This document shows, one piece after another, positions 6,001 to 64,000 of a DNA stretch of 64,000 nucleotides. Origin of the DNA: Octopus bimaculoides (lineage: Eukaryota); assembly GCF_001194135.2 (NCBI RefSeq), contig NC_068990.1, positions 69,503,958-69,567,957 on the forward strand. The letters run 5' to 3'. Made by a program: the position numbers and the translations under genes. A model generated the notes under the pieces. It ran no database searches. It saw only the letters and a list, made by a program, of their open reading frames with translations, and had not been told where the DNA came from. Positions within the stretch are counted from its first letter, which is position 1. Each line of letters begins with the position of its first letter.

Positions 6001-6414
6001 CAAATTCTACTACACTTCTCTTGCCATCTCCTCACTCCTGCACCTTCCTTGCACACAGTATGAATACACATACACAACCCTCCCCCTTTATACCCATTTC
6101 ATTACATGAATACACTCCAATACTTGCTCACGTCCCTAGCTCTCCTCCCATTTTACCCACATCCAATATGAATTGCATTCGTATCTGAGCTCAAACATCC
6201 TCAATTCAATTTGGGTCTTTTTCTTCCACTTCCATTGTCTCTTTTATCCTCCTCCTATACTTTATTCTTTTTTTTTGTATATTTCTTCCGATGAATGACT
6301 AGCATCCAAAACGTCCAGAATCTTTTATTTCTTTTTAAGCATTAAGCTAATGCATTTGCTAAAACTCATCCTTCTTGTATTGTCTTCTTTCATGATGTGC
6401 ATGTGTGTGTATAT

Positions 6415-6585: not shown

Positions 6586-6858
6586 CATACATGTGTATGT
6601 AAAGAATATTAATATTAACCAACTGTAAAGCTATAATCGTTTTTTTTTTTTTTTGCAATGAATATATACACTGAACAGTCTTAATGGGTTTGGATGTGTG
6701 AATGGTTATATGTATTGGTGGTGGTGGTGGTAGGGACATAAAAACAAAATTTTAAAAATAAATAAAAACCTTTAATAAATAAGTTAAGATGGAGCCAATG
6801 TCATGAAATGGTGAAATAAATGATTCTTTTGAAAATTATGAAATGAGTTTTTTTCATC

Positions 6859-7760
6859 TTATGCTGAAGAATGAGGTTCATTTTGTTGTGGAATCAGTGA
6901 TTCTGTTCTCTCTAAGTTTTGTTCAGTGATATCAAAGTCAGGCGGTAAAGGAAAAGAGGAATGGGTTGCTGGTTGGGTGGAATTGGAAGAGTCCATTAAT
7001 ATAGCCAAAGATTGAGTTTGGTGCTGTCCTTGGTTCACAATGAGTGGAGTTTGGTTACTGACAGCTGTACACGTGTTGTCTGGGAGGACAAAAAGATCAT
7101 AAGCAGATTGACGTGACCATTTCCTACAGCATTTTATTCCAGAACATCGATAACTTGCTAAGTTGTCATTACATTTGAAAACGACCAAAACAGCTATGAT
7201 ACAGAGTGCAACTAAAATAGTGCAAATAACTATTGGAAGAACAGGAGGACCGGTTTCAATTTCATCTTGTTTATGGCCATTTGCCATATCTGTAACAATA
7301 CCAATGCAATTGGAAGTTAAAGAATTGGGATCCACAGCTTCTGTCAAACACTGATCCACAATATTAGTCCGAGCACAGAAATTATAATAGACACCAGATA
7401 TAAGATCTGAGATTTCATAAGTGAGGTTTGTGATTCCAGGAATCTTATAACACGTGTCGCTTTCATTGGTCCAGTATTGTAATGTATATTTCAAGTATGG
7501 ATCATATTGCCATTCCGATAGGTTAGAGTTCTGTAATGTTATCCGAAGCTCAACGCTGTATTCAGTGATTCTTCTGGGAGTCAGAACTAACAGGGACTCA
7601 CAGTGAGGGCCAATCCAACGGTCATGGCAGATACATTCTGCATGTTTGAGGACTCGGTCATCCACTTCAGACAAAAGAGTCTGACATTGACCTCTGTTTT
7701 CACAATGGAAATCTTCACAAGGGTCATCAGTAAGGGCAGTTTCATAAAATGTTAAATTTT
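6859..7760 (-). CDS. Terminal coding exon of a type I membrane protein: EGF-like domain + FN3 domain + TM helix + cytoplasmic tail
   Basis: Uninterrupted 300-codon frame. EGF: C-EDFH-C-ENRGQ-C-x16-C-I-C-HDRWIGPH-C-E. FN3 with YTLQY...TYEISDLISGVYYNFC...C-IGIVT. Hydrophobic segment PVLPIVICTILVALCIIAVLVVF. Acceptor tttctctcttcag| immediately before 7760 (phase 1). TAA stop at 6861-6859. Confidence 0.9.
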
Positions 7761-7869
7761 CTGAAGAGAGAAACAAAAGTTTTTGAAAACAAACATCTGT
7801 TCAATAAGAAGGATATCTATAGTTAAGTATTTTAATAGTTAAATATGGCTACATCTCCACATTAAGAGG

Positions 7870-8030
7870 TTACAGTTCCAGTACAAGGGACATGTGATTA
7901 GAATGGCACATGAAAGAATCACAAGATGGATTCTTCAATTTCAGCCAACCGACAGGAGACCTAGGGGTATACCAAGACTGAGATGGTTGGATAATATCCA
8001 CAGTCTCAGTTGGTCACACTCCCTATGGAG
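7870..8030 (+). mobile_element. RTE LINE 3' ORF fragment
   Basis: GHVIRMAHERITRWILQFQPTDRRPRGIPRLRWLDNI matches the RTE C-terminal GHVxRM...GRPxxRW motif. Confidence 0.7.
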
Positions 8031-8284
8031 GAGGTGCCTTACTCTAATATTCCAACAACCCTCTCAGAAAAAGTGAGCAGAGAAAATGGACAGATGGAAA
8101 TATGGTTAAGTTATATATTTTATAATACAAACTACTGATAGCATTTATAATTGAATCAATATAAAACAAAAAAAAAATGTGAAATGTTAGGATTTTCTTT
8201 TAGGTTAAAGCTGCTGAGAATATTGACATAAAAACTTCAGTTAAAAATCTATATGGTACACAAATCTATGATACAATTTCAGTT

Positions 8285-8590
8285 TACATGTGTAGCAAGC
8301 AAATTTTCAGTACAGATGCATATACATGCATTCAGTACAGATATGTAGCAAACTATACTTTTAATAGATATATAACAAACTATAGTTTTACTACAGATGT
8401 ATATATAGCATATTATACATTCAATGCAGATATATAGCAGGCTACAGTTTTAATACAGATGTATATATTTCAAGCTATACATTCAATGCAGATATAAAGC
8501 AAGCTATAGTTTTAATACATGATGTATATATTTTAAGCTATACATTCAACATGGATATATAGCAAGTTATAAACTCAATAGATACAGCTA
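8285..8590 (+). repeat. Degenerate ~28-32 bp minisatellite
   Basis: Units like TACAGATGTATATATAGCAAGCTATAGTTTTAA / CATTCAATGCAGATATA; similar units reappear at 11275-11335. Confidence 0.7.
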
Positions 8591-8640
8591 CTTCTCCACA
8601 TTAAAAGGTTACATATATATATAGTGGGTCATCCCATAAA

Positions 8641-10640
8641 TAAAGGGGCATTTTCCTTGCTTCTGCCATAATCTGTCTATCTTGTTTACTCTTGAAGAAG
8701 AAGAAGAAAAAAAAAAAGAAGGGAGAATAAGAAGGAATGTAGGTAGTATGATAGTAGTGAGGTGCTAGATGGCCAAGTGACCTAAAAGTGGCTCATTATG
8801 GATTATATCAGTGATTGGGACTGTTTTTTAATGAATTCTTAGGAGTGTATCATTTTTAATATTTGCGTATGAGTTTGTGTTATTCTAAGGCCGTGGTGGA
8901 TATGTCATTTGTTGTAGACGTGTTCAAAAGGGGTCTGCATTTTGTAATAAAGATAGGTTTCTTTATTAGCCACACAGGGCTCAACACAGAGGGNNNNNNN
9001 NNNNNNNNNNNNNNNNNNNNNNNNNNNNNNNNNNNNNNNNNNNNNNNNNNNNNNNNNNNNNNNNNNNNNNNNNNNNNNNNNNNNNNNNNNNNNNNNNNNN
9101 NNNNNNNNNNNNNNNNNNNNNNNNNNNNNNNNNNNNNNNNNNNNNNNNNNNNNNNNNNNNNNNNNNNNNNNNNNNNNNNNNNNNNNNNNNNNNNNNNNNN
9201 NNNNNNNNNNNNNNNNNNNNNNNNNNNNNNNNNNNNNNNNNNNNNNNNNNNNNNNNNNNNNNNNNNNNNNNNNNNNNNNNNNNNNNNNNNNNNNNNNNNN
9301 NNNNNNNNNNNNNNNNNNNNNNNNNNNNNNNNNNNNNNNNNNNNNNNNNNNNNNNNNNNNNNNNNNNNNNNNNNNNNNNNNNNNNNNNNNNNNNNNNNNN
9401 NNNNNNNNNNNNNNNNNNNNNNNNNNNNNNNNNNNNNNNNNNNNNNNNNNNNNNNNNNNNNNNNNNNNNNNNNNNNNNNNNNNNNNNNNNNNNNNNNNNN
9501 NNNNNNNNNNNNNNNNNNNNNNNNNNNNNNNNNNNNNNNNNNNNNNNNNNNNNNNNNNNNNNNNNNNNNNNNNNNNNNNNNNNNNNNNNNNNNNNNNNNN
9601 NNNNNNNNNNNNNNNNNNNNNNNNNNNNNNNNNNNNNNNNNNNNNNNNNNNNNNNNNNNNNNNNNNNNNNNNNNNNNNNNNNNNNNNNNNNNNNNNNNNN
9701 NNNNNNNNNNNNNNNNNNNNNNNNNNNNNNNNNNNNNNNNNNNNNNNNNNNNNNNNNNNNNNNNNNNNNNNNNNNNNNNNNNNNNNNNNNNNNNNNNNNN
9801 NNNNNNNNNNNNNNNNNNNNNNNNNNNNNNNNNNNNNNNNNNNNNNNNNNNNNNNNNNNNNNNNNNNNNNNNNNNNNNNNNNNNNNNNNACACTCACGGT
9901 GCCATTCGCCATTCCTCGGCCTCTTTTTGATCCACGACTGCAGCTCGGTCATGGAGACGAGCTGCGGGAAAGCGCGTCGCACAAAAGGCGACCACACCTG
10001 CTCACCGTCGTCTATGTAGAGCCGGAGATGTCGCAGTCTCAGCGCATGTCTGCGCATCATCAACCACGGCATGCCCAGCCCTCCTTTCAGCGGGTGTTGG
10101 CAACAAACGGATCGCTTCACCATCGGAACGCTTCCTTTCCACAAAAAGTGGAAGAGGATGCGCTCCATTTCGGTGTCTCTTTACTAATTCGTTGGCTACA
10201 GGTTGTATTCTCCCTGAATTGGTAGAGGGGAAAAATGAAGGCTAAGCCCACTGCTATAATCCATAACAAGCCACTTTTAGGTCACTTGACCATTAAACAC
10301 CTTACTACTATCATGCTACCTACATTCCTTCTTATTCTCCCTTCTCTTTCTTCTTCTTCCTCTCCACCACCTTCTTCTTAATTTTACCACTATTGCTGTT
10401 TAGAATTTTATAAACAAAACATTCAAAAGAAATTCAGTTACTACTACCATCCCACAACAGGTCACTTTCAGAGCACTTGACCATTTAACATTCTTATCTT
10501 CTTCCTCCTCCCCTTCTTCTTCTTCTTCTTCTCCTCCTCCTGTTTCTTCTTCCCTACCAAGAATTCACAATGACCTCAAATCCACAAGAGTAAACAAGAG
10601 ACAGAAACAGGCAGAAACAAGGAAAATGCCACTTGTATTT
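8641..10640. repeat. Long inverted repeat (foldback) enclosing a LINE insertion
   Basis: 8641-8810 is the reverse complement of 10250-10350 plus 10585-10635 (e.g. GCCACTTTTAGGTCACTTG, CCTACATTCCTTCTTATTCTCCCTTC, CAAGAGTAAACAAGA, GGAAAATGCC). The left end TA-GTGGGTCATCCCATAA looks like a Tc1/mariner TIR; a related motif occurs at 19935-19950. Confidence 0.7.
8958..10200 (-). mobile_element. 5'-truncated Tx1/L1-clade LINE spanning a gap
   Basis: ERILFHFLWKG...LKGGLGMP (thumb region); 3' end GCCCTGTGTGGCTAATAAAG on the far side of the gap, at a distance matching the copy at 62954-64000. Confidence 0.8.
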
Positions 10641-10710
10641 GAACTCTATGCAAATATTCTTTTAAAAAACTTTTCTTTTAATTTTTCCAAAATTTAATTG
10701 TTTTCCATAC

Positions 10711-10752
10711 TTACAGCTGAAAAAATCTCAACGACTGAAACCGGTACTGAAA
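10711..10752 (+). ncRNA. Minimal type I hammerhead-ribozyme relic (Penelope-associated type)
   Basis: TTACAG-CTGAAAA-AATC-TCAAC-GACT-GAAA-CCGG-TA-CTGAAA. Stem I CAG/CTG, stem II A(A)TC/GACT, palindromic stem III ACCGGT, GUA triplet; two G>A changes from canonical. Confidence 0.55.
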
Positions 10753-10850
10753 TGTTTTTTATAAAATTATTTGAGCATTTTCTACCTTGACTTTTTTTTT
10801 CCATATATACCAACTCATATGTTCCTTTTCAACCTTCTACATTATATATA

Positions 10851-10887
<37 letters not shown>

Positions 10888-11694
10888 NNNNNNNNNNNNN
10901 NNNNNNNNNNNNNNNNNNNNNNNNNNNNNNNNNNNNNNNNNNNNNNNNNNNNNNNNNNNNNNNNNNNNNNNNNNNNNNNNNNNNNNNNNNNNNNNNNNNN
11001 NNNNNNNNNNNNNNNNNNNGGCCGTCCACTCGTGACCAAGGAAGACCATTGCCGACCTTCAGGAACATTGTGCGCTCTAGGACTAACTTATATTTCGCAT
11101 TTGCGGCTCCATTGGTGGCTAATGAGCCTTGCTCTTGACAAGCATACACGACTGCAAACATTGCAGACCAAGCTTTCCCCATTCACTATACGAGCCGTGC
11201 ACTTTCACGCAGCTCGCTTAAGTTCTTCATGCTGGATACATGCACTCTCAAAAGTGTCGATCCCCTCCTTAACCTGTTATATATATAGCAACCTATAGCC
11301 TCAATGCAAATGTATACAAGCTATAGTTTTATTCAGCACATTATATCTTCTAAGTGGCTGTTGTTGCTTAGCTCCAGGCTGACTATGACTGAATAGAACT
11401 ATGGCCATCCTTCCTGCTTGTATATGAGGGTCCTACTTTCCAATATATTGTTCATTAATTATATGACACAATAATATCTGGAGAAAGTTTGACTGCTATT
11501 TCTAGCAGGTTATGTGAAAGTTAACAGGTAGGTCAGTTACTTAATATAACTGAGGTAAGTTAGTTCTGATTCATCTGATTGTTACTGCAGAAACGATTCT
11601 TTGAGTAGTAGAGTACTATTCTCAAATTCCTTTAGAGTGATGCTCCAGCACAACCGCTGTACACAAACTGAGAAATAATAAAAAGAATAGCTAC

Positions 11695-11770
11695 CTGCAA
11701 ACACCCTTGGCTGACAATACAATAGACACATTACAAGACACAGAACTAGTCTGTTAAAATAAATATTCAT
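11695..11770 (-). CDS. Signal-peptide exon (MNIYFNRLVLCLVMCLLYCQPRVFA) of the EGF-FN3-TM gene
   Basis: 25 codons + 1 nt, then donor GCAG|GTAGCT (phase 1, matching the acceptor at 7760 and joining as codon GAA). N-terminal basic residue plus hydrophobic core. Upstream acceptor ttttcttttgtag| before 11795. In-frame TGA upstream of the ATG marks this as the start. Confidence 0.7.
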
Positions 11771-11989
11771 TTTCTTTCTGTGATTTCTTCAACATCTACA
11801 AAAGAAAAGAAAAGAAAAAAAAAGAAAGAATTAAGAAAAAATAACTGAAGATTTTGTTTTGTAATTTTTTTTTCTTTTACTTATTTAAAATAGAAAATTT
11901 AAAAACAAACTTTCCCCATATTCTTCAAGAATTCTTGGAGACATATTTTTGGGTTTCATACATTCTTCAATCATTAGTGACTTCTTAGA

Positions 11990-18510: not shown

Positions 18511-19949
18511 CAGTTAAGGAAGAGTCAGAGAAAGGCCAAGCCACAAAAGCACAATGAAAATCTCTGACACATCCAGAAGGAAAGAAAAGTGAATGTAATG
18601 TATTTTGCAGATCCTTGAATGACTAAAATTGTTCTTCTGTGAAGTAACTNNNNNNNNNNNNGGGGGGGGGGGGGCAGAAGATAAACCTATATTTCATTTT
18701 ACTCAATATACCAAATAATATTTATAAAAGTACTATGCCATTTTAAGGTTACTCAGAGCCTTCTAGTTGTGCAAAAGGCTTTGTCTTTCATAGATGCTAT
18801 TCTACATGTATACCATATTATATAGAAGCAAACGAACATTATTTTTCCACATCACAATATCATATCACTGAATTATTAATTAAACACTAACAGGCAAAGT
18901 ATTATGGCAATCATTATTGCAATATTGATTAACACTAACTTCTATTATGACTCTTTTCACATCTAGGATGCTTCATAAGGCTATTAAATCGATCCACTAC
19001 TTGATTGCTACTTTATTTTATCGATCGTGCAAGGATTAAAAGTAGCATTGATCTCAGTAGGATTTGAACTCAGAACATAAAAGGCAACAACTAAAAGAAT
19101 ACCACAGCCATTTAGTTTGACATTCTAATGATTTTGGTAATCAGAAACAAAGTACACCATTTATGTACATTATCATCGTTATTCCATACTGGCATGGGTT
19201 GGTTGCTTTGATAGGATGTGCCAGAGGATGTGTCAAGCTCCACTCTCTACTTTGGCCTGGTTTTTACAGGTGGATGCCCTTCCTAACACCAACCACTTTA
19301 TAGCATGTACCGGGAACTTTTTCCTTAGCAGCAGCACTAGTGAGGTTGCCATGCAGATTGTAATACTATCCACTCTGAGGGGCAGCTTTATGCTAGGCAA
19401 TGAGGAGCAAAAGTATGAGAAAAGGGGCAGGGCAGAACAAGTTTTTGCCATAGAGATGACATATGACTACACACATTGGAGAAGTGAATGTGGTGGGGGA
19501 GAGATTAGGGTAGGGAAAAGATAAAATGGAGGTAATGTGAGATCTGTGTAGATCCTTAACATACAAAGTGAGTAGAAGAATATGAAAGTAGAGGAATTGA
19601 GAGCAAGGTTGGTGAAGTTGCAAGAAGTATGGGAGAGTGAGAGATGGGGAATGGGTGAGAATGTGGATATTATGAATGATGTGTTGAGTCGATGTAATGT
19701 AGAAGGTAGAGAAGTGTAGGTGACAACTGTAAAGACTGGGTAAGGGATGGGTGTGACCTATTATGATATGGCCGAAGAGCAGTAGAATAGTAAAGAAGAC
19801 ACGGTAGACAGGTGAGAAAGAAAGAGAATGAGGTAGAGGAGAGAGCTTAAAGATACTCAAATAAATACTGCAAGGCAATTCGCAACCATTATTGACATAC
19901 GAGTTACCATGAAACATAAATTGCATTCCAGAACTTATGGGATGACCTG

Positions 19950-19961
19950 ATATATATACAC

Positions 19962-19994
<33 letters not shown>

Positions 19995-20930
19995 TATATG
20001 CATGTATATATATACACATACATATATACACACATATATACATATATATATATATATAAATATATATATACGTACATATATATATATATACATATATATA
20101 CGCACATATATATATATACATATATATACGCACATATATATATATATACATATATATACGCACATATATATATATACATATATATACGCACATATATATA
20201 TATATACATATATATACGCATATATATNNNNNNNNNNNNNNNNNNNNNNNNNNNNNNNNNNNNNNNNNNNNNNNNNNNNNNNNNNNNNNNNNNNNNNNNN
20301 NNNNNNNNNNNNNNNNNNNNNNNNNNNNNNNNNNNNNNNNNNNNNNNNNNNNNNNNNNNNNNNNNNNNNNNNNNNNNNNNNNNNNNNNNNNNNNNNNNNN
20401 NNNNNNNNNNNNNNNNNNNNNNNNNNNNNNNNNNNNNNNNNNNNNNNNNNNNNNNNNNNNNNNNNNNNNNNNNNNNNNNNNNNNNNNNNNNNNNNNNNNN
20501 NNNNNNNNNNNNNNNNNNNNNNNNNNNNNNNNNNNNNNNNNNNNNNNNNNNNNNNNNNNNNNNNNNNNNNNNNNNNNNNNNNNNNNNNNNNNNNNNNNNN
20601 NNNNNNNNNNNNNNNNNNNNNNNNNNNNNNNNNNNNNNNNNNNNNNNNNNNNNNNNNNNNNNNNNNNNNNNNNNNNNNNNNNNNNNNNNNNNNNNNNNNN
20701 NNNNNNNNNNNNNNNNNNNCACATACAAGTACATATATACACATAAATACATATATAGATATACATACATATATACATAGATATATATACATACATATAT
20801 ACATAGATATATATACATACACACATATATATATACATATAAATATACTTACTGATATTATATATACACACACAAACATGTATATATGCATAAATACACA
20901 TATGTATGCACATATACATACATATATGAT
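19950..20930. repeat. Long compound (TA)n/(TATACA)n microsatellite containing a gap
   Basis: Directly visible. Confidence 0.95.
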
Positions 20931-20944
20931 TGCTCAATACAAAG

Positions 20945-21910
20945 CTTGACCATCTCAGTATACATGAGATTCAGTTCTGGCACAAGATCTTAAGTGTTTT
21001 TTTTTTAGACCAGACAAACTTTTAAGAACACGTCCACATGAATTGCACACTAGTTTTTGTGCAGCTTGAAATGAATGTAGCGTCTGATTTTGATGAATTT
21101 TGATATGCTTATTCATATCTCCAGAAGATTTGCAAATCCTGTGGCATTGATGTAAACTGATAGATATGTTGTATAATCTGTACAAAGTTCTTATGTGAGA
21201 TTTAAGTCATCTCAGACAGGCAGTCTTTGCAACAAAATTTACAAGTAGAAAAAATTCCACCAAATTCATATTCCCTTTCTTATTTTCTTCTCAATATTTA
21301 CTGGTATTAAGATGATGAACCGGTAGAAATTGTTAGGATGCCAGGCAAAATGCTTAGTGGTATTTCATCTCTCTTTACATTCTGAGTTCAAATTCCACCA
21401 AGTTTGACTTTGCCTTTCATCCTTTTATGGGTCAATAAAATAATTACTGGTTGAGCACTGGGGTCAATGTAATCAGAGATATGTTTGTCAGCCATGCAGA
21501 CAATATGTCCAGACCAGTGTAGTTGATTTTCCAAAATTATTGTCTGGATGGGACAAATACCGGATGCAGCTAGAACATCAGAGTCAAAGGTGAGTGAATT
21601 CCATTTAATTTTCAGAATACAGCATACACATTTTTAGTGGAATCATTTCAGGAGTCAGAAGCGATGCTTGTAACACATTCAAATTTCAGAGTAGTTATAG
21701 TATGGAGAATAACAACAAATTATTTATAAACAGATAGTTTTGTTTCATTGTTGATATTTTTTTGTGACCAAACCCAAATCTCTAAACTACCAAAAGACTT
21801 TGCTGTCTTTTGAACCTTTAGAGGAATTTCTGAATCAAATGTTCTATCTTCATTTACTGCACTCCCGAAGTATGCGAAAGATTCAACAATTTTAAGATTA
21901 CCTTTCACAT
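20945..21910 (-). mobile_element. Degenerate RTE LINE fragments, with a family B SINE inserted at 21310-21475
   Basis: LKIVESFAYFGS...VWSQKNINNETKLSVYK; ILENQLHWSGHIVCM; C-terminal C2H2-like CNSCGRVLKSLSGLKKKHLRSC. Confidence 0.8.
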
Positions 21911-32864: not shown

Positions 32865-33400
32865 ATATATAGGGCAGGTAAAATTCCCGAGATCCATGGG
32901 CGAGTTCACTCCAGCGGTCTTCGTCCCTCATCATCGCTGCCATGTCCTGTGCCTCCCAGAGGCCAGTATTTTACCTTAGAGCATCAACATATGTCATCCC
33001 CGGTTTCTTTTTTCTAGTGTGTCCGTGTAGGGGCTCCCACAGGAGCACTGGGTGCAGTATCAACTCTGAATGACGGTGAGCATGTCCAGCTAACCTCAGT
33101 CTCCTCTGTGCTATTTTCGAGCTAACTATTGGGAAGCTCTTGTACAGCTCTGAGTTCTTCACCCTCAGTGTATACTGATTAATGTTCAGAGCCATCCTCA
33201 GCATTCTCGTGTAGCACCCATCCACCATCTGAGTAGGTTTCTTGGTCAGTGTCCAAGTCTCAGACCCGTACAACAGCACAGGCTCCACTGTAGCAACGAT
33301 GAGACGAATCTTCAGGTCTTTACGAAAGTCCGACTTCCATACAGATCTCAAACTGTGGCATGCCGCCCAGGCTTTACCCTTCCTCTCAGCTATATTATCC
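32865..33400 (-). mobile_element. RTE LINE 3' ORF fragment
   Basis: VEPVLLYGSETWTLTK...YTRMLRMALN...RRLRLAGHAHR...TYVDAL...DRWSEL. Confidence 0.9.
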
Positions 33401-33413
33401 ACACATATATCTA

Positions 33414-33478
<65 letters not shown>

Positions 33479-34581
33479 ATACACGTATATATACATACAT
33501 ATATGTATGTGTGTGTGTACGATGGGATTCTACACAGTTTCTGCCGGTCAAATCCACTCGCAAGGCATTAGTCGGCCCAGGGCTATAGTAGAAAATATTT
33601 GCACAATGAGCTGTGTAGGGCGACTGAACACGAAACCACTTGGCTGCAAAATGAGTTTCTCAGCCACACATCCTTGTCTGCTATCCAAAAATTATTTTGA
33701 GACAAGACATCAAATTGAGAATAAAATATTAAAAATTTTTTCAGTTTCATTTATTGGCAAGTTTTGGTCAATAATTAACGAACATTCTTTTTTTTATTTT
33801 ACCCTGTTGTTCTCTAGTTTCATTTTCGGTTTCTATTTCTGAATGTTTAAATACAAATGACTTGCATATTTAGGCTTTACCACTCAGTAAACAGGGTGGC
33901 CAGTGGTTTCAATCATTTCTCTATCTGATTTACCGATAGGTTATCAGATATATATGACATTTGTAAGTAGCCCCAATCACCAGTACTGATCAATCAGTTC
34001 GATTGATCGCTTCCAGTTAGTGGAAATTATTGTCTTTAAGGTCAACGCATATCTTTCATTGACCTAATATAATTACTTATATATCTATATAATGCCAGAA
34101 AGTTAATCCTCAACAGCAGTGAGCTAGCAATATTTCCTGTTAGAGTATGAGCAAAGAAAGATAAGAGGATTAAAGAGATTTCTGATTCTGGGTACAAAAT
34201 CTGGAGTAGTGGTGGGAGGGGGTCTATTTTGGGGATTGCACTGTACTCTAATAAATACGGTAGGCTGCTACTGCTGCTGTTATTATTTAGGCTCAGTTCA
34301 GCTTTGACTTCAACAGACTTAACATCAGATTATCCAGGACAAAGGGGAGATATTTTTAGTGTCCCTTTAAGATAATAAGCTTTTGTTTAAGGGACGTTTT
34401 GCTTTTTTTTGTCTAGGAAGCTGAGTTACTATGTAGGGTCTTCTTCATGTTGTAAATATATAACGAGGTGAATATACACAAACTAGCATTTATTAACAAA
34501 ATTATCGAAAGCTGTTTTACCTCTTGTTTTGAGTTTCGGAAATGAAAGCAAATGACTATTTTATGATAAAGAGTCATTATG

Positions 34582-62954: not shown

Positions 62955-64000
62955 TTATTAGCTACGCAGGGCCGAATTCAGAAGGGCAATACAATATAGA
63001 ACATTTATTTTTCGGAAAACAAAATACGATCAAAAGAGATCGAAAACGTTTGGGGCGTGTAAACAGCAAAATAATAATGTTCCATTTATAATAGGGTTCC
63101 AAAAAAGGGGAGTAAAAATGTAATACAGATTAGGTTTATCCGTGAAAAGAAAAGCCTACAAAAAAGGCCACGGTAACCTCAGGCAGGGAAAGAACACACC
63201 AGAGCAAAGTGCTCTCTCTCACTTTTGGATTTACAGGATCATGCTCAAAGTGGTTTCGTCATTCACGCGTACCATCTTTGCTATATTCACCCACCTTTTA
63301 TTGAAACTTTCATGAGACAAAGCTTCCCTCTCTATTCTCACCTTCTTTTTCAAGTGGCACTTGAAAAAGAGCGATTGGCCAGAGAGGAAAGTGTTTGTCT
63401 CTAAATCTTTCGCACGAGTCCACCACACGCATTCTTTCACAATAGCCACCAGTACAATAAAAACTGACTGTATTGCCTTCTCGGTTAAAGGAAGATTGTG
63501 GGGCAATATTCACGATAGACTCGGCCGATAACCGAATACGTCCCACTCGTGACAGCAGCTGTTCGACATAAGCTCACAGGTCTGAAATGGCTGAACACTG
63601 CTCGAGTGCATGCAGAACGGTTTCGTTGCTCTGACCGCATCTCAAGCAAGTCGGTCCGGTGTTTCTTAAACCGTGCCTGTAGAGCTTATCTCGAACGGGC
63701 AATGCTTTTCGATAGCATTGCCAGGCCAGGGATCTCTGGAAATTGTCCATAGGTCGCGGCCCGAAAGTGGTCCTGAAGAGGCGGGTCAGGTGTTCCTCGT
63801 CGACGCTCAGATTCTCCTCAAGAGGGTCGTCACACTTCCTCTCCACTAATCCTCTATAAAACACTTTTGTGGAATTAGAGTTGCACAAGTTTGGTCCCGG
63901 ACGGCAGAGTTGCTCGAGAGCACAGCGACACAAGCGGGGCCATTCGTCCAGCCTTGGTCCATGTTTGATCCATGACTGCAGTTCGGCCAAAGAGACGAGT
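62954..64000 (-). mobile_element. Tx1/L1-clade LINE 3' part
   Basis: RSLAWQCYRKALPV...CCHC CLRCGQSNETVLHALEQC; 3' end GGCCCTGCGTAGCTAATAAA directly followed by (TCTA)n; shares ELQSWIK with the 9890-10168 copy. Confidence 0.9.

What the first reader, a model, noticed from the sequence alone, without database searches (positions are those of the whole stretch)
6859..11795. Compact two-coding-exon receptor: signal peptide-EGF-FN3-TM, a vasorin-like architecture with no LRRs
Seen: a 76-nt signal-peptide exon and the 902-nt terminal exon join in phase 1 to give ~325 aa; the ORF track lists them separately. Known: vasorin is LRR-EGF-FN3-TM, and FN3 domains of the vasorin/FLRT/LRFN type carry a Y-x-x-C...C-x4-T disulfide pattern, present here as YYNFC...CIGIVT. 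Inference: this is a minimal vasorin-like cell-surface protein. The 3.9-kb intron is filled with recognisable repeats and its larger gap is explained by a LINE, leaving little room for LRR exons. The EGF has an unusually long 16-residue loop between C3 and C4. It could be a lineage-specific adhesion or ligand-trap protein.
Basis: partly seen in the sequence, partly recalled or inferred. Interest (0 to 1): 0.72.

Follow-up and report, generated by a model that had tools for sequence, protein, structure and literature searches.

The report
Octopus EGF–FN3 membrane protein gene
This is a real, intact two-coding-exon octopus gene for a small cell-surface protein (signal peptide, one EGF module, one fibronectin-III module, membrane anchor); NCBI already predicts it as an uncharacterised protein, it belongs to an unstudied family found across molluscs, and it resembles vasorin only in the order of its domains.

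Summary
On the minus strand, 11770-11695 (76 nt) and 7760-6859 (902 nt) join GT-AG in phase 1 to give 325 aa. That protein is 100% identical to NCBI's predicted 'uncharacterized protein LOC106867519' of Octopus bimaculoides.

Both assembly gaps lie inside the intron. Argonauta has the same 76-nt exon and phase with an ungapped 1,053-nt intron. mRNA contigs of a related cephalopod run from the signal peptide straight into the EGF domain. An in-frame stop sits 7 codons upstream of the ATG, and no LRR array is detectable anywhere in the sequenced part of the window. dN/dS is 0.18.

AlphaFold and Foldseek confirm an EGF domain with a long beta-hairpin, followed by an FN3 fold, a TM helix and a disordered tail.

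The gene is not cephalopod-specific. An exhaustive profile search finds about 300-aa relatives in gastropods, bivalves and a chiton, all uncharacterised.

The vasorin reading is architectural only. Vasorin does carry Y-x-x-C...C-x4-T, but so do unrelated FN3 domains. Domain by domain, the family scores no better against vasorin than against generic EGF or FN3 domains.

Function is inferred: a glycosylated single-pass binding or recognition protein. A tethered EGF-type ligand is a minority alternative.

The parts
11695..11770 (-). Coding part of exon 1: ATG plus 25 codons of signal peptide (MNIYFNRLVLCLVMCLLYCQPRVFA) and the first base of codon 26. The donor GT is at 11694-11693.
   Evidence: The hydrophobic core has a Kyte-Doolittle mean of 1.68, and V-F-A occupies positions -3 to -1. 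AF2 models a helix at residues 2-18. Argonauta has the same length and phase.
11771..11800 (-). 5' leader of exon 1. It contains an acceptor-like ttttgtag| (11800-11796) that is conserved in Argonauta, and an in-frame TGA at 11791-11789. A 13-codon uORF starts at 11795 and overlaps the main ATG out of frame.
   Evidence: The in-frame stop lies between the acceptor-like site and the ATG, so no upstream coding exon can read into this frame. The upstream 5'UTR exon that this implies was not located (inference).
7761..11694 (-). Intron, 3,934 nt, GT...AG, phase 1. It holds two assembly gaps and repeats and no detectable coding exon.
   Evidence: The three gene-strand frames give no Pfam LRR or other domain. 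An LRR motif scan of the whole window found only 4 isolated hits, all broken by stops.
8994..9889 (.). Assembly gap (896 N), intronic. It interrupts a LINE ORF2 tail.
   Evidence: The ORF at 9890-10168 (-) ends at the gap with ...TELQSWIKKRPRNGEWHREC. A second copy at 63574-63999 continues from the same motif into a zf-RVT domain.
9890..10168 (-). LINE (non-LTR retrotransposon) ORF fragment in the gene's orientation, running into the large gap.
10888..11019 (.). Assembly gap (132 N), intronic, directly next to a (TA)n microsatellite at 10843-10887.
8699..8813 (.). Left arm of a 115-nt inverted repeat (89% complementary). Its partner is at 10249-10363, and the two arms bracket the LINE fragment and the large gap.
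8336..8579 (.). Intronic tandem repeat with a period of about 29/62 nt.
6859..7760 (-). Terminal coding exon (902 nt): the rest of codon 26 through aa 325, plus TAA (6861-6859).
   Evidence: It is identical to NCBI LOC106867519.
7600..7719 (-). EGF-like domain, aa 40-79. The six Cys are spaced 4, 5, 16, 1 and 8 residues apart. The 16-residue C3-C4 loop (7683-7636) is modelled as an extended beta-hairpin.
   Evidence: Pfam EGF_2 scores 21.2 bits, just under its 22.1 cut-off. hhalign gives 91-96% probability against known EGF domains. AF2 places strands at 50-58 and 61-69 with pLDDT about 89. The loop is 12-18 residues in all family members.
7291..7596 (-). FN3-fold domain, aa 81-182, with seven strands. 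Invariant residues are W122, N124 (a sequon in 21 of 23 members), C129, L145, Y151, C154, C163, C177 and T182. It contains YYNFC (7389-7375) and CIGIVT (7308-7291).
   Evidence: Foldseek against PDB matches FN3 domains of EphA8, PTPRJ, PTPRF and Tencon with E from 1.8e-5 and probability 1.0. Pfam fn3 is only sub-threshold, E 0.06.
7177..7248 (-). Transmembrane helix, aa 197-220 (PPVLPIVICTILVALCIIAVLVVF).
   Evidence: The Kyte-Doolittle 19-residue mean reaches 3.45. AF2 models a helix at 199-228.
6862..7176 (-). Cytoplasmic tail, aa 221-325, predicted disordered. It contains a juxtamembrane Cys cluster (aa 222-237, 7173-7126), the cephalopod-conserved YDLF[IV]LPDN (from 7101) and NQTPL.
   Evidence: dN/dS of TM plus tail is 0.14.
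6771..6776 (-). ATTAAA, the first candidate polyadenylation signal, 83 nt after the stop. AATAAA also occurs further downstream, starting at 6329 and 6266.
   Evidence: No transcript evidence; inference only.

Best explanation
The locus is a functional protein-coding gene, NCBI LOC106867519 of Octopus bimaculoides. It has two coding exons and probably at least one unlocated 5'UTR exon.

It encodes a 325-aa type I single-pass membrane glycoprotein. The parts in order are:
- a cleavable signal peptide (cleavage about VFA|E);
- one EGF-like domain whose C3-C4 segment forms an unusually long beta-hairpin;
- immediately after it, one FN3-fold domain stapled by four invariant cysteines and carrying a near-invariant N-glycosylation sequon (N124);
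- a short stalk and a TM helix;
- a roughly 105-aa disordered cytoplasmic tail.

It is the cephalopod orthologue of an uncharacterised family of about 300-aa proteins with the same collinear layout, present across Mollusca. None of these proteins has LRRs.

Shown: the gene structure, the domain folds, the topology features, the family distribution and purifying selection.

Inferred mechanism: the rigid EGF-FN3 ectodomain acts as a binding module for an extracellular protein partner, as a recognition, adhesion or co-receptor molecule. There is no catalytic domain. Output would run through the tail, where a juxtamembrane Cys cluster is a likely palmitoylation site. The conserved acidic/di-hydrophobic motif (YDLF[IV]LP in cephalopods, D/E-L-[FL]-L-L-P in several other molluscs) looks like a YxxPhi or acidic-dileucine sorting signal, which suggests regulated endocytosis or trafficking.
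For: Gene model:
- GT-AG, phase-1 join giving 325 aa.
- 100% identity and coverage to the NCBI prediction, with the same 4,912-nt span.
- The same exon structure in Argonauta with an ungapped intron.
- Spliced mRNA contigs of a relative with signal peptide directly followed by EGF.
- An in-frame stop upstream of the ATG in both octopods.

Selection: dN/dS is 0.18 overall, 0.10 for EGF, 0.11 for FN3, 0.14 for TM plus tail, and about 1 for the signal peptide.

Folds: the ectodomain model has pLDDT 86.2 and pTM 0.78. Foldseek matches FN3 domains with probability 1.0.

Topology: hydrophobic N-terminus and TM helix; four ectodomain sequons, of which N124 is conserved in 21 of 23 members.

Family: 23 hits in 1.84 billion representatives. 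The strongest non-cephalopod hits (E 1e-29 to 1e-17) cover EGF, FN3 and TM collinearly in Haliotis, Lottia, Patella, Solemya, Potamilus, Liolophura and unnamed transcripts. Weaker hits include Ostrea and heterobranchs. All named hits are called 'uncharacterized' or 'EGF-like domain-containing'.

Tail motifs.
Against: - There is no direct evidence of function: no expression data, no binding partner, and no paper mentions this gene or its orthologues.
- No octopus transcript was available to me, so the junction rests on NCBI's model, on orthologues and on selection.
- Signal-peptide cleavage, palmitoylation and sorting-motif readings come from sequence rules, not from predictors or experiments.
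- The disulfide pairing of the four FN3 cysteines could not be read, because model coordinates are not exposed.
- Cephalopods lack the C-terminal motif (RGYAxFSxKN...LTTVxEY) that other molluscs conserve, so the tail's output may differ between lineages.
- The family profile that reached beyond cephalopods was built from cephalopod sequences only. Members outside Mollusca may therefore have been missed, and several hits are unnamed transcripts of unknown taxon.
Confidence: 0.65

Rival explanations
1. Membrane-tethered EGF-family growth-factor precursor of the LIN-3 / Spitz / TGF-alpha / neuregulin kind. The EGF domain with its long B-loop hairpin would be the receptor-binding element. The FN3 domain would serve as a stalk, and the ectodomain would act juxtacrine or be shed to activate the mollusc EGFR.
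For: - The best single-domain match of the family profile among all PDB sequences is the C. elegans LIN-3 EGF domain: 21.5 bits, domain E 0.001, aligned gap-free across the long C3-C4 loop, sharing C.C..GW.G.RC.
- TGF-alpha, betacellulin, neuregulin, EGF, epigen, epiregulin and Spitz populate the weak hits.
- hhalign gives LIN-3 the top score of the EGF domains tried, 38.0.
- The protein has a single EGF domain in a type I membrane protein, and G-x-R-C is present in roughly half of the family.
Against: - The margins are small: Notch EGF13 scores 36.5 against 38.0 for LIN-3. PDB is also enriched for EGFR ligands.
- C1-C2 spacing is 4, the Notch-like value, not 7.
- The ligand-critical Arg is His in both octopods, and Q, L or K in other members.
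- A whole FN3 domain separates the EGF domain from the membrane, and strand A of the FN3 starts right after C6. The free C-terminal tail used by EGFR ligands is therefore absent.
- A metazoan survey of EGF ligands picked a different Lottia gene (JGI 154532), not the family member 235673 (PMC4914847).
Confidence: 0.12
2. One reading: a minimal vasorin, meaning a relative of vasorin's EGF-FN3-TM half. It would either have lost the LRRs or represent the ancestral cassette, and would act as a cell-surface or shed trap for a TGF-beta-type ligand.
For: - The order EGF-FN3-TM matches vasorin (architecture per PMC11222745).
- Full-length profile-profile comparison gives 96.3% probability and E 1.7e-9 over 169 collinear columns. 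The F-strand YxxC and the G-strand C-x4-T are aligned.
- Real vasorins carry that Cys pair.
- Three family members weakly hit the Pfam Fn3_ELFN model, E 0.0046.
Against: - LRRs, the defining part of vasorin, are absent here and in every family member.
- None of the 23 hits of the exhaustive HMMER search that could be named is a vasorin.
- Split by domain, vasorin is a worse match than generic FN3 domains (21.9 against 28.0-37.4). As an EGF match it is below three of five other EGF domains and level with human EGF (30.8 against 30.1-38.0).
- The Cys pair also occurs in unrelated FN3 domains.
- The family has two extra invariant cysteines.
- The cytoplasmic tails share no motif.
- In the review cited, TGF-beta trapping is attributed to a pocket formed by the LRR, EGF and FN domains together.
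Confidence: 0.1
3. Artefact: a mis-joined scaffold or an incomplete model, with real exons hidden in the gaps or upstream, or a decaying pseudogene.
For: - Two gaps of estimated length lie in the intron.
- No octopus transcript was examined here.
- An acceptor-like site upstream of the ATG shows that the 5' end of the gene is not fully defined.
Against: - The gaps are intronic.
- Argonauta has the same exon 1, phase and exon 2 start with an ungapped 1,053-nt intron that holds only retroelement-like ORFs.
- mRNA contigs of a relative carry no extra sequence between the signal peptide and the EGF domain.
- An in-frame stop precedes the ATG.
- The 325-codon ORF is intact and dN/dS is 0.18.
- The product is identical to NCBI's independent model.
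Confidence: 0.03

Closest known systems
Uncharacterised mollusc EGF-FN3-TM proteins. Examples: Argonauta hians LOC115215930, Haliotis rubra LOC124259989, Lottia gigantea LOTGIDRAFT_235673, Patella vulgata LOC126819421, Solemya velum KAL5012172, Potamilus streckersoni KAK3593407, Liolophura sinensis LOC135480611, Ostrea edulis LOC125681365.
   Same: - Collinear signal peptide-EGF-FN3-TM-tail layout, mostly about 280-340 aa.
- EGF Cys spacing of 4, 5, 12-18, 1 and 8.
- Invariant or near-invariant YW-N-x-S/T, with four invariant FN3 cysteines (C129, C154, C163, C177) and T182.
- A Cys-rich juxtamembrane segment.

   Different: - Identity to non-cephalopod members is only 17-24%.
- Non-cephalopod members usually carry a C-terminal RGYAxFSxKN...I/VxLTTVxEY motif that the five cephalopod sequences lack.
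- Heterobranch members (Lymnaea, Elysia, Plakobranchus) have tails of about 700 extra residues.
Vasorin (VASN / Slit-like 2)
   Same: - Type I membrane glycoprotein.
- EGF directly followed by a single FN3, then TM.
- An FN3 F-strand/G-strand Cys pair in the form Y-x-x-C...C-x4-T.

   Different: - No LRR array.
- No similarity beyond generic domain level.
- Two extra invariant FN3 cysteines.
- A long EGF C3-C4 loop of 16 residues, against about 8 in vasorin.
- An unrelated tail.
EGFR-ligand precursors (C. elegans LIN-3, Drosophila Spitz, TGF-alpha, neuregulin)
   Same: - A single EGF domain in a type I membrane protein.
- A long C3-C4 (B-loop) hairpin, closest in length to LIN-3.
- A C-x-C-x3-[WYF]-x-G-x-[R]-C-E ending.

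   Different: - An FN3 domain lies between the EGF domain and the membrane.
- C1-C2 spacing is 4, not 7.
- The Arg before C6 is not conserved (it is His in octopus).
- The family was not recovered as a ligand in the survey of PMC4914847.
Generic FN3 domains of receptors (EphA8 FN3-2, PTPRJ, PTPRF, PTP-delta, Tencon, sDscam)
   Same: A seven-strand FN3 fold. Foldseek gives probability 1.0, TM-score normalised to the target of 0.57-0.74, and 12-22% identity.
   Different: - Four conserved cysteines.
- A 20-residue FG loop.
- Below Pfam fn3's curated threshold.

Membership tests
Vasorin (VASN/SLITL2) | N-terminal array of about 10 leucine-rich repeats (architecture per PMC11222745) | tested here: not met
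   - The mature protein starts about 14 residues before the EGF domain.
- No Pfam LRR in the protein, in the intron frames, or in any family member.
- No LRR motif array in any frame of the 64-kb window.
- An in-frame stop upstream of the ATG.
Vasorin (VASN/SLITL2) | EGF-like domain followed by one FN3 domain and a TM helix | tested here: met
   Searches give the folds. hhalign aligns the family collinearly with vasorin's EGF-FN3-TM half.
Vasorin (VASN/SLITL2) | Sequence relatedness to vasorin above what any EGF or FN3 domain gives | tested here: not met
   - None of the nameable hits among the 23 in 1.84 billion representatives is a vasorin.
- FN3 against vasorin FN3 scores 21.9, below the generic FN3 domains (28.0-37.4).
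- EGF against vasorin EGF scores 30.8, level with human EGF (30.1) and below the other four EGF domains tried (32.4-38.0).
   The pattern is present here (YYNFC...CIGIVT) and in real vasorins. It is not specific: it also occurs in the unrelated tandem-FN3 protein P0015, and family members weakly match the Interfer-bind FN3 model.
Vasorin (VASN/SLITL2) | Binds and traps TGF-beta | not testable with these tools
   Needs a binding assay.
EGFR-ligand precursors (EGF/TGF-alpha/neuregulin/Spitz/LIN-3) | Single EGF motif with six Cys in a secreted or type I membrane precursor | tested here: met
EGFR-ligand precursors (EGF/TGF-alpha/neuregulin/Spitz/LIN-3) | Ligand-type spacing and residues (CX7CX4-5CX10-13CXCX8GXRC; consensus from my own knowledge of the field, not tested against a curated model) | tested here: inconclusive
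   - Spacing here is 4, 5, 16, 1, 8.
- The long B-loop matches LIN-3, which is the best PDB single-domain hit, but C1-C2 is 4.
- G76 is present, but the Arg is His in octopods and is Arg in only about half of the family.
EGFR-ligand precursors (EGF/TGF-alpha/neuregulin/Spitz/LIN-3) | Domain architecture consistent with known ligands, with the EGF domain next to the membrane stalk | tested here: not met
   About 100 residues of FN3 lie between the EGF domain and the TM helix. The Lottia member was not among the ligands listed in PMC4914847.
EGFR-ligand precursors (EGF/TGF-alpha/neuregulin/Spitz/LIN-3) | Activates an EGFR | not testable with these tools
   Needs a receptor binding or phosphorylation assay.
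Fibronectin type III fold | Seven-strand beta-sandwich matching solved FN3 domains | tested here: met
   The AF2 model has strands at 81-90, 94-103, 117-123, 129-135, 139-143, 150-156 and 177-181. Foldseek gives probability 1.0 to many FN3 domains. Pfam fn3 is sub-threshold only: E 0.06 for this protein, and hits in 15 of 23 members.
Mollusc-wide EGF-FN3-TM family (undescribed; no Pfam model) | Collinear full-length similarity, long C3-C4 EGF loop, YW-N-x-S/T and four invariant FN3 cysteines | tested here: met
   E 1e-29 to 1e-17 for the strongest non-cephalopod hits. The invariant columns are listed and the loop lengths.

The most novel reading that the evidence does not exclude
The family is a mollusc-wide (possibly wider) class of membrane-tethered EGF-type signalling ligand. 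A LIN-3-like EGF domain with a long B-loop would be presented on, or shed together with, a disulfide-stapled FN3 stalk. This would be an EGFR-ligand architecture not described in any animal, and it would have been missed by ligand surveys that required known architectures.
Probability: 0.1. Interest if true: 0.55.

Novelty: new member of a known kind. Interest (0 to 1): 0.28.

Why it matters
The gene model itself adds nothing new, because NCBI already predicts exactly this protein.

The modest value lies in context. The protein belongs to a conserved, single-copy-looking and entirely uncharacterised family of small EGF-FN3 surface proteins. The family spans cephalopods, gastropods, bivalves and chitons, has no Pfam model, and is not mentioned in the literature I could search.

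Small surface proteins under this much constraint (dN/dS 0.18) usually have a specific binding partner. Identifying that partner could reveal a mollusc-specific cell-cell signalling or adhesion axis. If the partner were the EGFR, the family would extend the known range of EGF-ligand architectures.

The work also shows that the 'vasorin-like' label should not be propagated as a homology statement.

Tried and rejected
1. Hidden LRR or other exons.
- Pfam scan of the three gene-strand frames of the intron found nothing.
- An LRR motif scan of all six frames of the window gave only 4 isolated hits, all broken by stops.
- The Argonauta intron is ungapped and holds only retroelement-like ORFs.
- tblastn of all cephalopod orthologues found no paralogue or extra exon in the window.

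2. Curated families. Pfam gives only sub-threshold EGF_2, fn3 and Interfer-bind hits for the protein. Across the family, every hit to a non-FN3 family is weak, and hits to small TM proteins such as ECSCR, MAP17 and Protocadherin most likely come from the hydrophobic helix.

3. Vasorin homology. The full-length hhalign result looked convincing but failed domain-wise controls. Two caveats apply. The vasorin sequences actually compared are database records. The Notch and LIN-3 fragments were copied.

4. A two-domain EGF-FN3 structural template. Foldseek of the ectodomain-only model again returned single FN3 domains.

5. Literature. No paper holds LOC106867519, the orthologue identifiers or the SRR run prefix.

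Full report
**1. The observation**

Read on the minus strand, an ATG at 11770 opens a 76-nt coding segment (MNIYFNRLVLCLVMCLLYCQPRVFA plus one base). It ends at a canonical donor, CAG|GTAGCT, at 11695/11694. A polypyrimidine tract and tctcttcag| precede 7760, and from there an open frame runs 902 nt to TAA at 6861-6859.

The join is phase 1 and gives 978 nt, which is 325 codons plus the stop. The mechanical ORF list shows the two parts as separate ORFs.

**2. The gaps**

The window has 17 runs of N. Two of them, 8994-9889 and 10888-11019, lie in this gene, and both are inside the 3,934-nt intron. They are 1,234 nt and 676 nt from the nearest exon edge, so no reading frame crosses a gap. The remaining question is whether exon 1 really belongs upstream of exon 2 with nothing coding in between. 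Four independent results say yes.

- (i) The spliced product is 100% identical over 100% of its length to NCBI's 'uncharacterized protein LOC106867519 [Octopus bimaculoides]'. The gene call in assembly GCA_001194135.2 (CM046610.1) spans 4,912 nt, exactly 11770-6859.
- (ii) In Argonauta hians the orthologue (65% identity) has the same 76-nt first coding exon and the same phase. Its exon 2 also begins cag|AAAATT, and its intron is 1,053 nt with no N at all. The exon-1 flanks of the two species align, including an acceptor-like ttttgtag| about 25 nt upstream of the ATG.
- (iii) A 349-aa relative (54% identity) is encoded as one uninterrupted ORF on twelve 2-3 kb contigs assembled from different sequencing runs. 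These are spliced mRNAs. They have stop codons upstream of the start, and the signal peptide is followed directly by the EGF domain.
- (iv) In both octopods an in-frame TGA lies between the acceptor-like site and the ATG (11791-11789 in the window), so no upstream coding exon can feed this frame.

The three gene-strand frames of the intron contain no Pfam domain. An LRR motif scan of all six frames of the whole 64-kb window gave only four isolated matches, all broken by stops.

A minus-strand ORF at 9890-10168 ends at the gap with ...TELQSWIKKRPRNGEWHREC. A second copy of the same element at the window's end (63574-63999) starts with MAELQSWIKHGPRLDEWPRLC and continues into a zf-RVT domain (PF13966, E 7.8e-7), the C-terminal zinc-binding part of LINE reverse transcriptases. 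The small gap abuts a (TA)n microsatellite.

**3. Whether it is a working gene**

Against Argonauta, dN/dS is 0.18 overall. By region it is 0.10 for EGF, 0.11 for FN3, 0.14 for TM plus tail, and about 1 for the signal peptide, which is the usual pattern for a secreted or membrane protein. Two decapodiform-like sequences compared with each other give 0.11.

**4. The protein**

AlphaFold2 was run with a 23-sequence family alignment.
- It models an N-terminal helix (residues 2-18).
- It models an EGF domain whose long C3-C4 segment forms an extended hairpin (strands 50-58 and 61-69, pLDDT about 89).
- It models a seven-strand sandwich spanning residues 81-181, and a TM helix at 199-228.
- The tail is disordered.

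The ectodomain alone gives pLDDT 86.2 and pTM 0.78. Foldseek against PDB returns only FN3 domains, including EphA8 FN3-2, PTPRJ, PTPRF, PTP-delta, Tencon, sDscam and fibronectin 10Fn3. These matches have probability 1.0 and 12-22% identity.

Pfam alone would not have called either domain: EGF_2 scores 21.2 bits against a cut-off of 22.1, and fn3 has E 0.06.

Hydropathy supports one TM segment at about 197-220, with a 19-residue mean up to 3.45. Four N-x-S/T sequons lie in the ectodomain. V-F-A|E fits the -3/-1 rule for signal peptidase; this is a sequence rule, not a predictor output.

**5. Relatives**

The word-indexed search found only five proteins, all cephalopod or cephalopod-like. An exhaustive HMMER profile search of 1.84 billion cluster representatives found 23. 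The strongest non-cephalopod hits, E 1e-29 to 1e-17, are proteins of 276-339 aa that match collinearly from the EGF domain through the TM helix.

The named hits come from these species:
- Gastropods: Haliotis, Lottia, Patella and Babylonia, plus Lymnaea, Elysia and Plakobranchus with tails of about 1,000 aa.
- Bivalves: Solemya, Potamilus and Ostrea.
- A chiton: Liolophura.

All are labelled 'uncharacterized', 'hypothetical' or 'EGF-like domain-containing'. Several further hits are unnamed transcripts.

The 23-member alignment shows the family signature:
- In the FN3 domain, the invariant W122, a near-invariant N124 that forms an N-x-S/T sequon in 21 of 23 members, and the invariant C129, L145, C154, C163 and C177. 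Y151 and T182 are nearly invariant.
- A Cys-rich juxtamembrane stretch.

Most non-cephalopod members end with RGYAxFSxKN...[IV]xLTTVxEY, which all five cephalopod sequences lack. Cephalopods instead conserve YDLF[IV]LPDN and NQTPL.

The gene is therefore neither cephalopod-specific nor a recently 'minimised' form of something larger.

**6. Vasorin**

The top hit, 'vasorin precursor [Camelus ferus]', was 84% identical to the bait.

Its FN3 domain reads ...ATYS[IV]CV...EEACGEA[HR]T, which is Y-x-x-C...C-x4-T.

A profile-profile comparison of the family with vasorin's C-terminal half gives 96.3% probability and E 1.7e-9 over 169 collinear columns, with both cysteines aligned. Any EGF-FN3-TM protein would do something like this, however, so I split the comparison by domain and added controls.

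| Comparison | hhalign score |
|---|---|
| Family FN3 vs vasorin FN3 | 21.9 (14.8% probability) |
| Family FN3 vs fibronectin 10Fn3 | 28.0 |
| Family FN3 vs Tencon | 29.2 |
| Family FN3 vs one repeat of the unrelated tandem-FN3 hit P0015 | 37.4 |
| Family EGF vs vasorin EGF | 30.8 |
| Family EGF vs human EGF | 30.1 |
| Family EGF vs Notch1 EGF12 | 32.4 |
| Family EGF vs TGF-alpha | 34.7 |
| Family EGF vs Notch1 EGF13 | 36.5 |
| Family EGF vs LIN-3 | 38.0 |

Vasorin is thus no closer to the family than generic domains are.

The Cys pair is also not specific. P0015 has YTFC...CISKYT. Five family members hit the Interfer-bind FN3 model (best E 1.5e-5), against three for Fn3_ELFN. The family carries two further invariant cysteines, and the tails share nothing.

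Together with the absent LRRs, which are the defining part of vasorin (PMC11222745), membership fails. The resemblance is one of domain order only.

**7. An alternative lead**

The best single-domain match of the family profile among all PDB chain sequences is the EGF domain of C. elegans LIN-3: 21.5 bits, domain E 0.001. It aligns without a gap across the long C3-C4 loop and ends ...CHCPQGWEGTRC. Notch EGF domains align only with an 8-residue deletion. TGF-alpha, neuregulin, betacellulin, EGF, epigen, epiregulin and Spitz fill the weaker ranks.

This suggests a tethered EGF-type ligand, but five points argue against it:
- The score margins are small.
- C1-C2 spacing is 4, not 7.
- The Arg before C6 is His in both octopods.
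- The FN3 domain starts immediately after C6.
- A metazoan survey of EGF ligands listed a different Lottia gene (PMC4914847).

I keep it as a minority rival and as the most novel reading not excluded.

**8. Mechanism**

Shown: a constrained, glycosylatable, disulfide-rich EGF-FN3 ectodomain on a single TM helix, with a disordered tail and no catalytic domain.

Inferred: the protein binds an extracellular protein partner, as a recognition, adhesion or co-receptor molecule. The juxtamembrane Cys cluster is probably palmitoylated. The YDLF[IV]LP motif, or D/E-L-[FL]-L-L-P in several other molluscs, acts as a YxxPhi or acidic-dileucine-type sorting signal. None of this has been tested, and no paper mentions the gene or its orthologues.

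**9. Verdict**

The gene is already predicted in NCBI. What is new is only the recognition of a mollusc-wide, uncharacterised EGF-FN3-TM family and its signature. Interest is low to moderate.

Noticed in passing
window 63574-63999 (-): A second copy of the LINE whose ORF runs into the intronic gap. The ORF carries a zf-RVT domain (PF13966, E 7.8e-7) and runs off the end of the window.
   Followed up: partly
window 11795-11754 (-): A 13-codon uORF (MLKKSQKENEYLF*) starts right at the acceptor-like site and overlaps the main ATG out of frame. Argonauta has only a minimal ATG-TGA at the corresponding place, so the uORF is probably not conserved.
   Followed up: partly
window 11796-11800 (-) and L008 about 9970-9975: An acceptor-like ttttgtag| about 25 nt upstream of the ATG is conserved between Octopus and Argonauta. 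This implies at least one non-coding 5' exon further upstream, which was not located.
   Followed up: no
family alignment A2; proteins P0007, P0009, P0010, P0014, P0016, P0020, P0026, P0027: Non-cephalopod family members conserve a C-terminal cytoplasmic motif, (P)SSPGRPKH...RGYAxFSxKN...[IV]xLTTVxEY. All five cephalopod sequences lack it. I could not match the motif to any known domain.
   Followed up: partly
proteins P0017 (Lymnaea, 973 aa), P0021 (Plakobranchus, 1077 aa), P0024 (Elysia, 1012 aa): Heterobranch gastropod members keep the EGF-FN3-TM head but have cytoplasmic tails about 700 residues longer, partly repetitive (HNHREYSQNP repeats in Lymnaea).
   Followed up: no
window 8699-8813 and 10249-10363: A 115-nt inverted repeat (89% complementary) brackets the LINE fragment and the large gap inside the intron. 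Shorter arms at 8638-8694 and 10585-10640 extend the symmetry. It may be a foldback or MITE-like element into which the LINE inserted.
   Followed up: no
window 32971-33480 (-) and 59707-60333 (+): Two other long ORFs look like retroelement remnants. One has an RT-tail-like ...VEPVLLYGSETWTL... and the other an integrase-like ...TTPYYRRSNGQGKRFV.... Neither gave a Pfam hit at E <= 0.1.
   Followed up: partly
window 19393-20949, 56619-57029, 60925-61648 and the flanks of other gaps: Of the 17 N runs in the window, at least four (10888-11019, 20228-20719, 57204-57300, 61040-61609) lie next to TA/CA-rich microsatellite-like sequence (the 'YIYIYI' ORFs). This suggests these gaps reflect low-complexity repeats rather than missing genes.
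   Followed up: no
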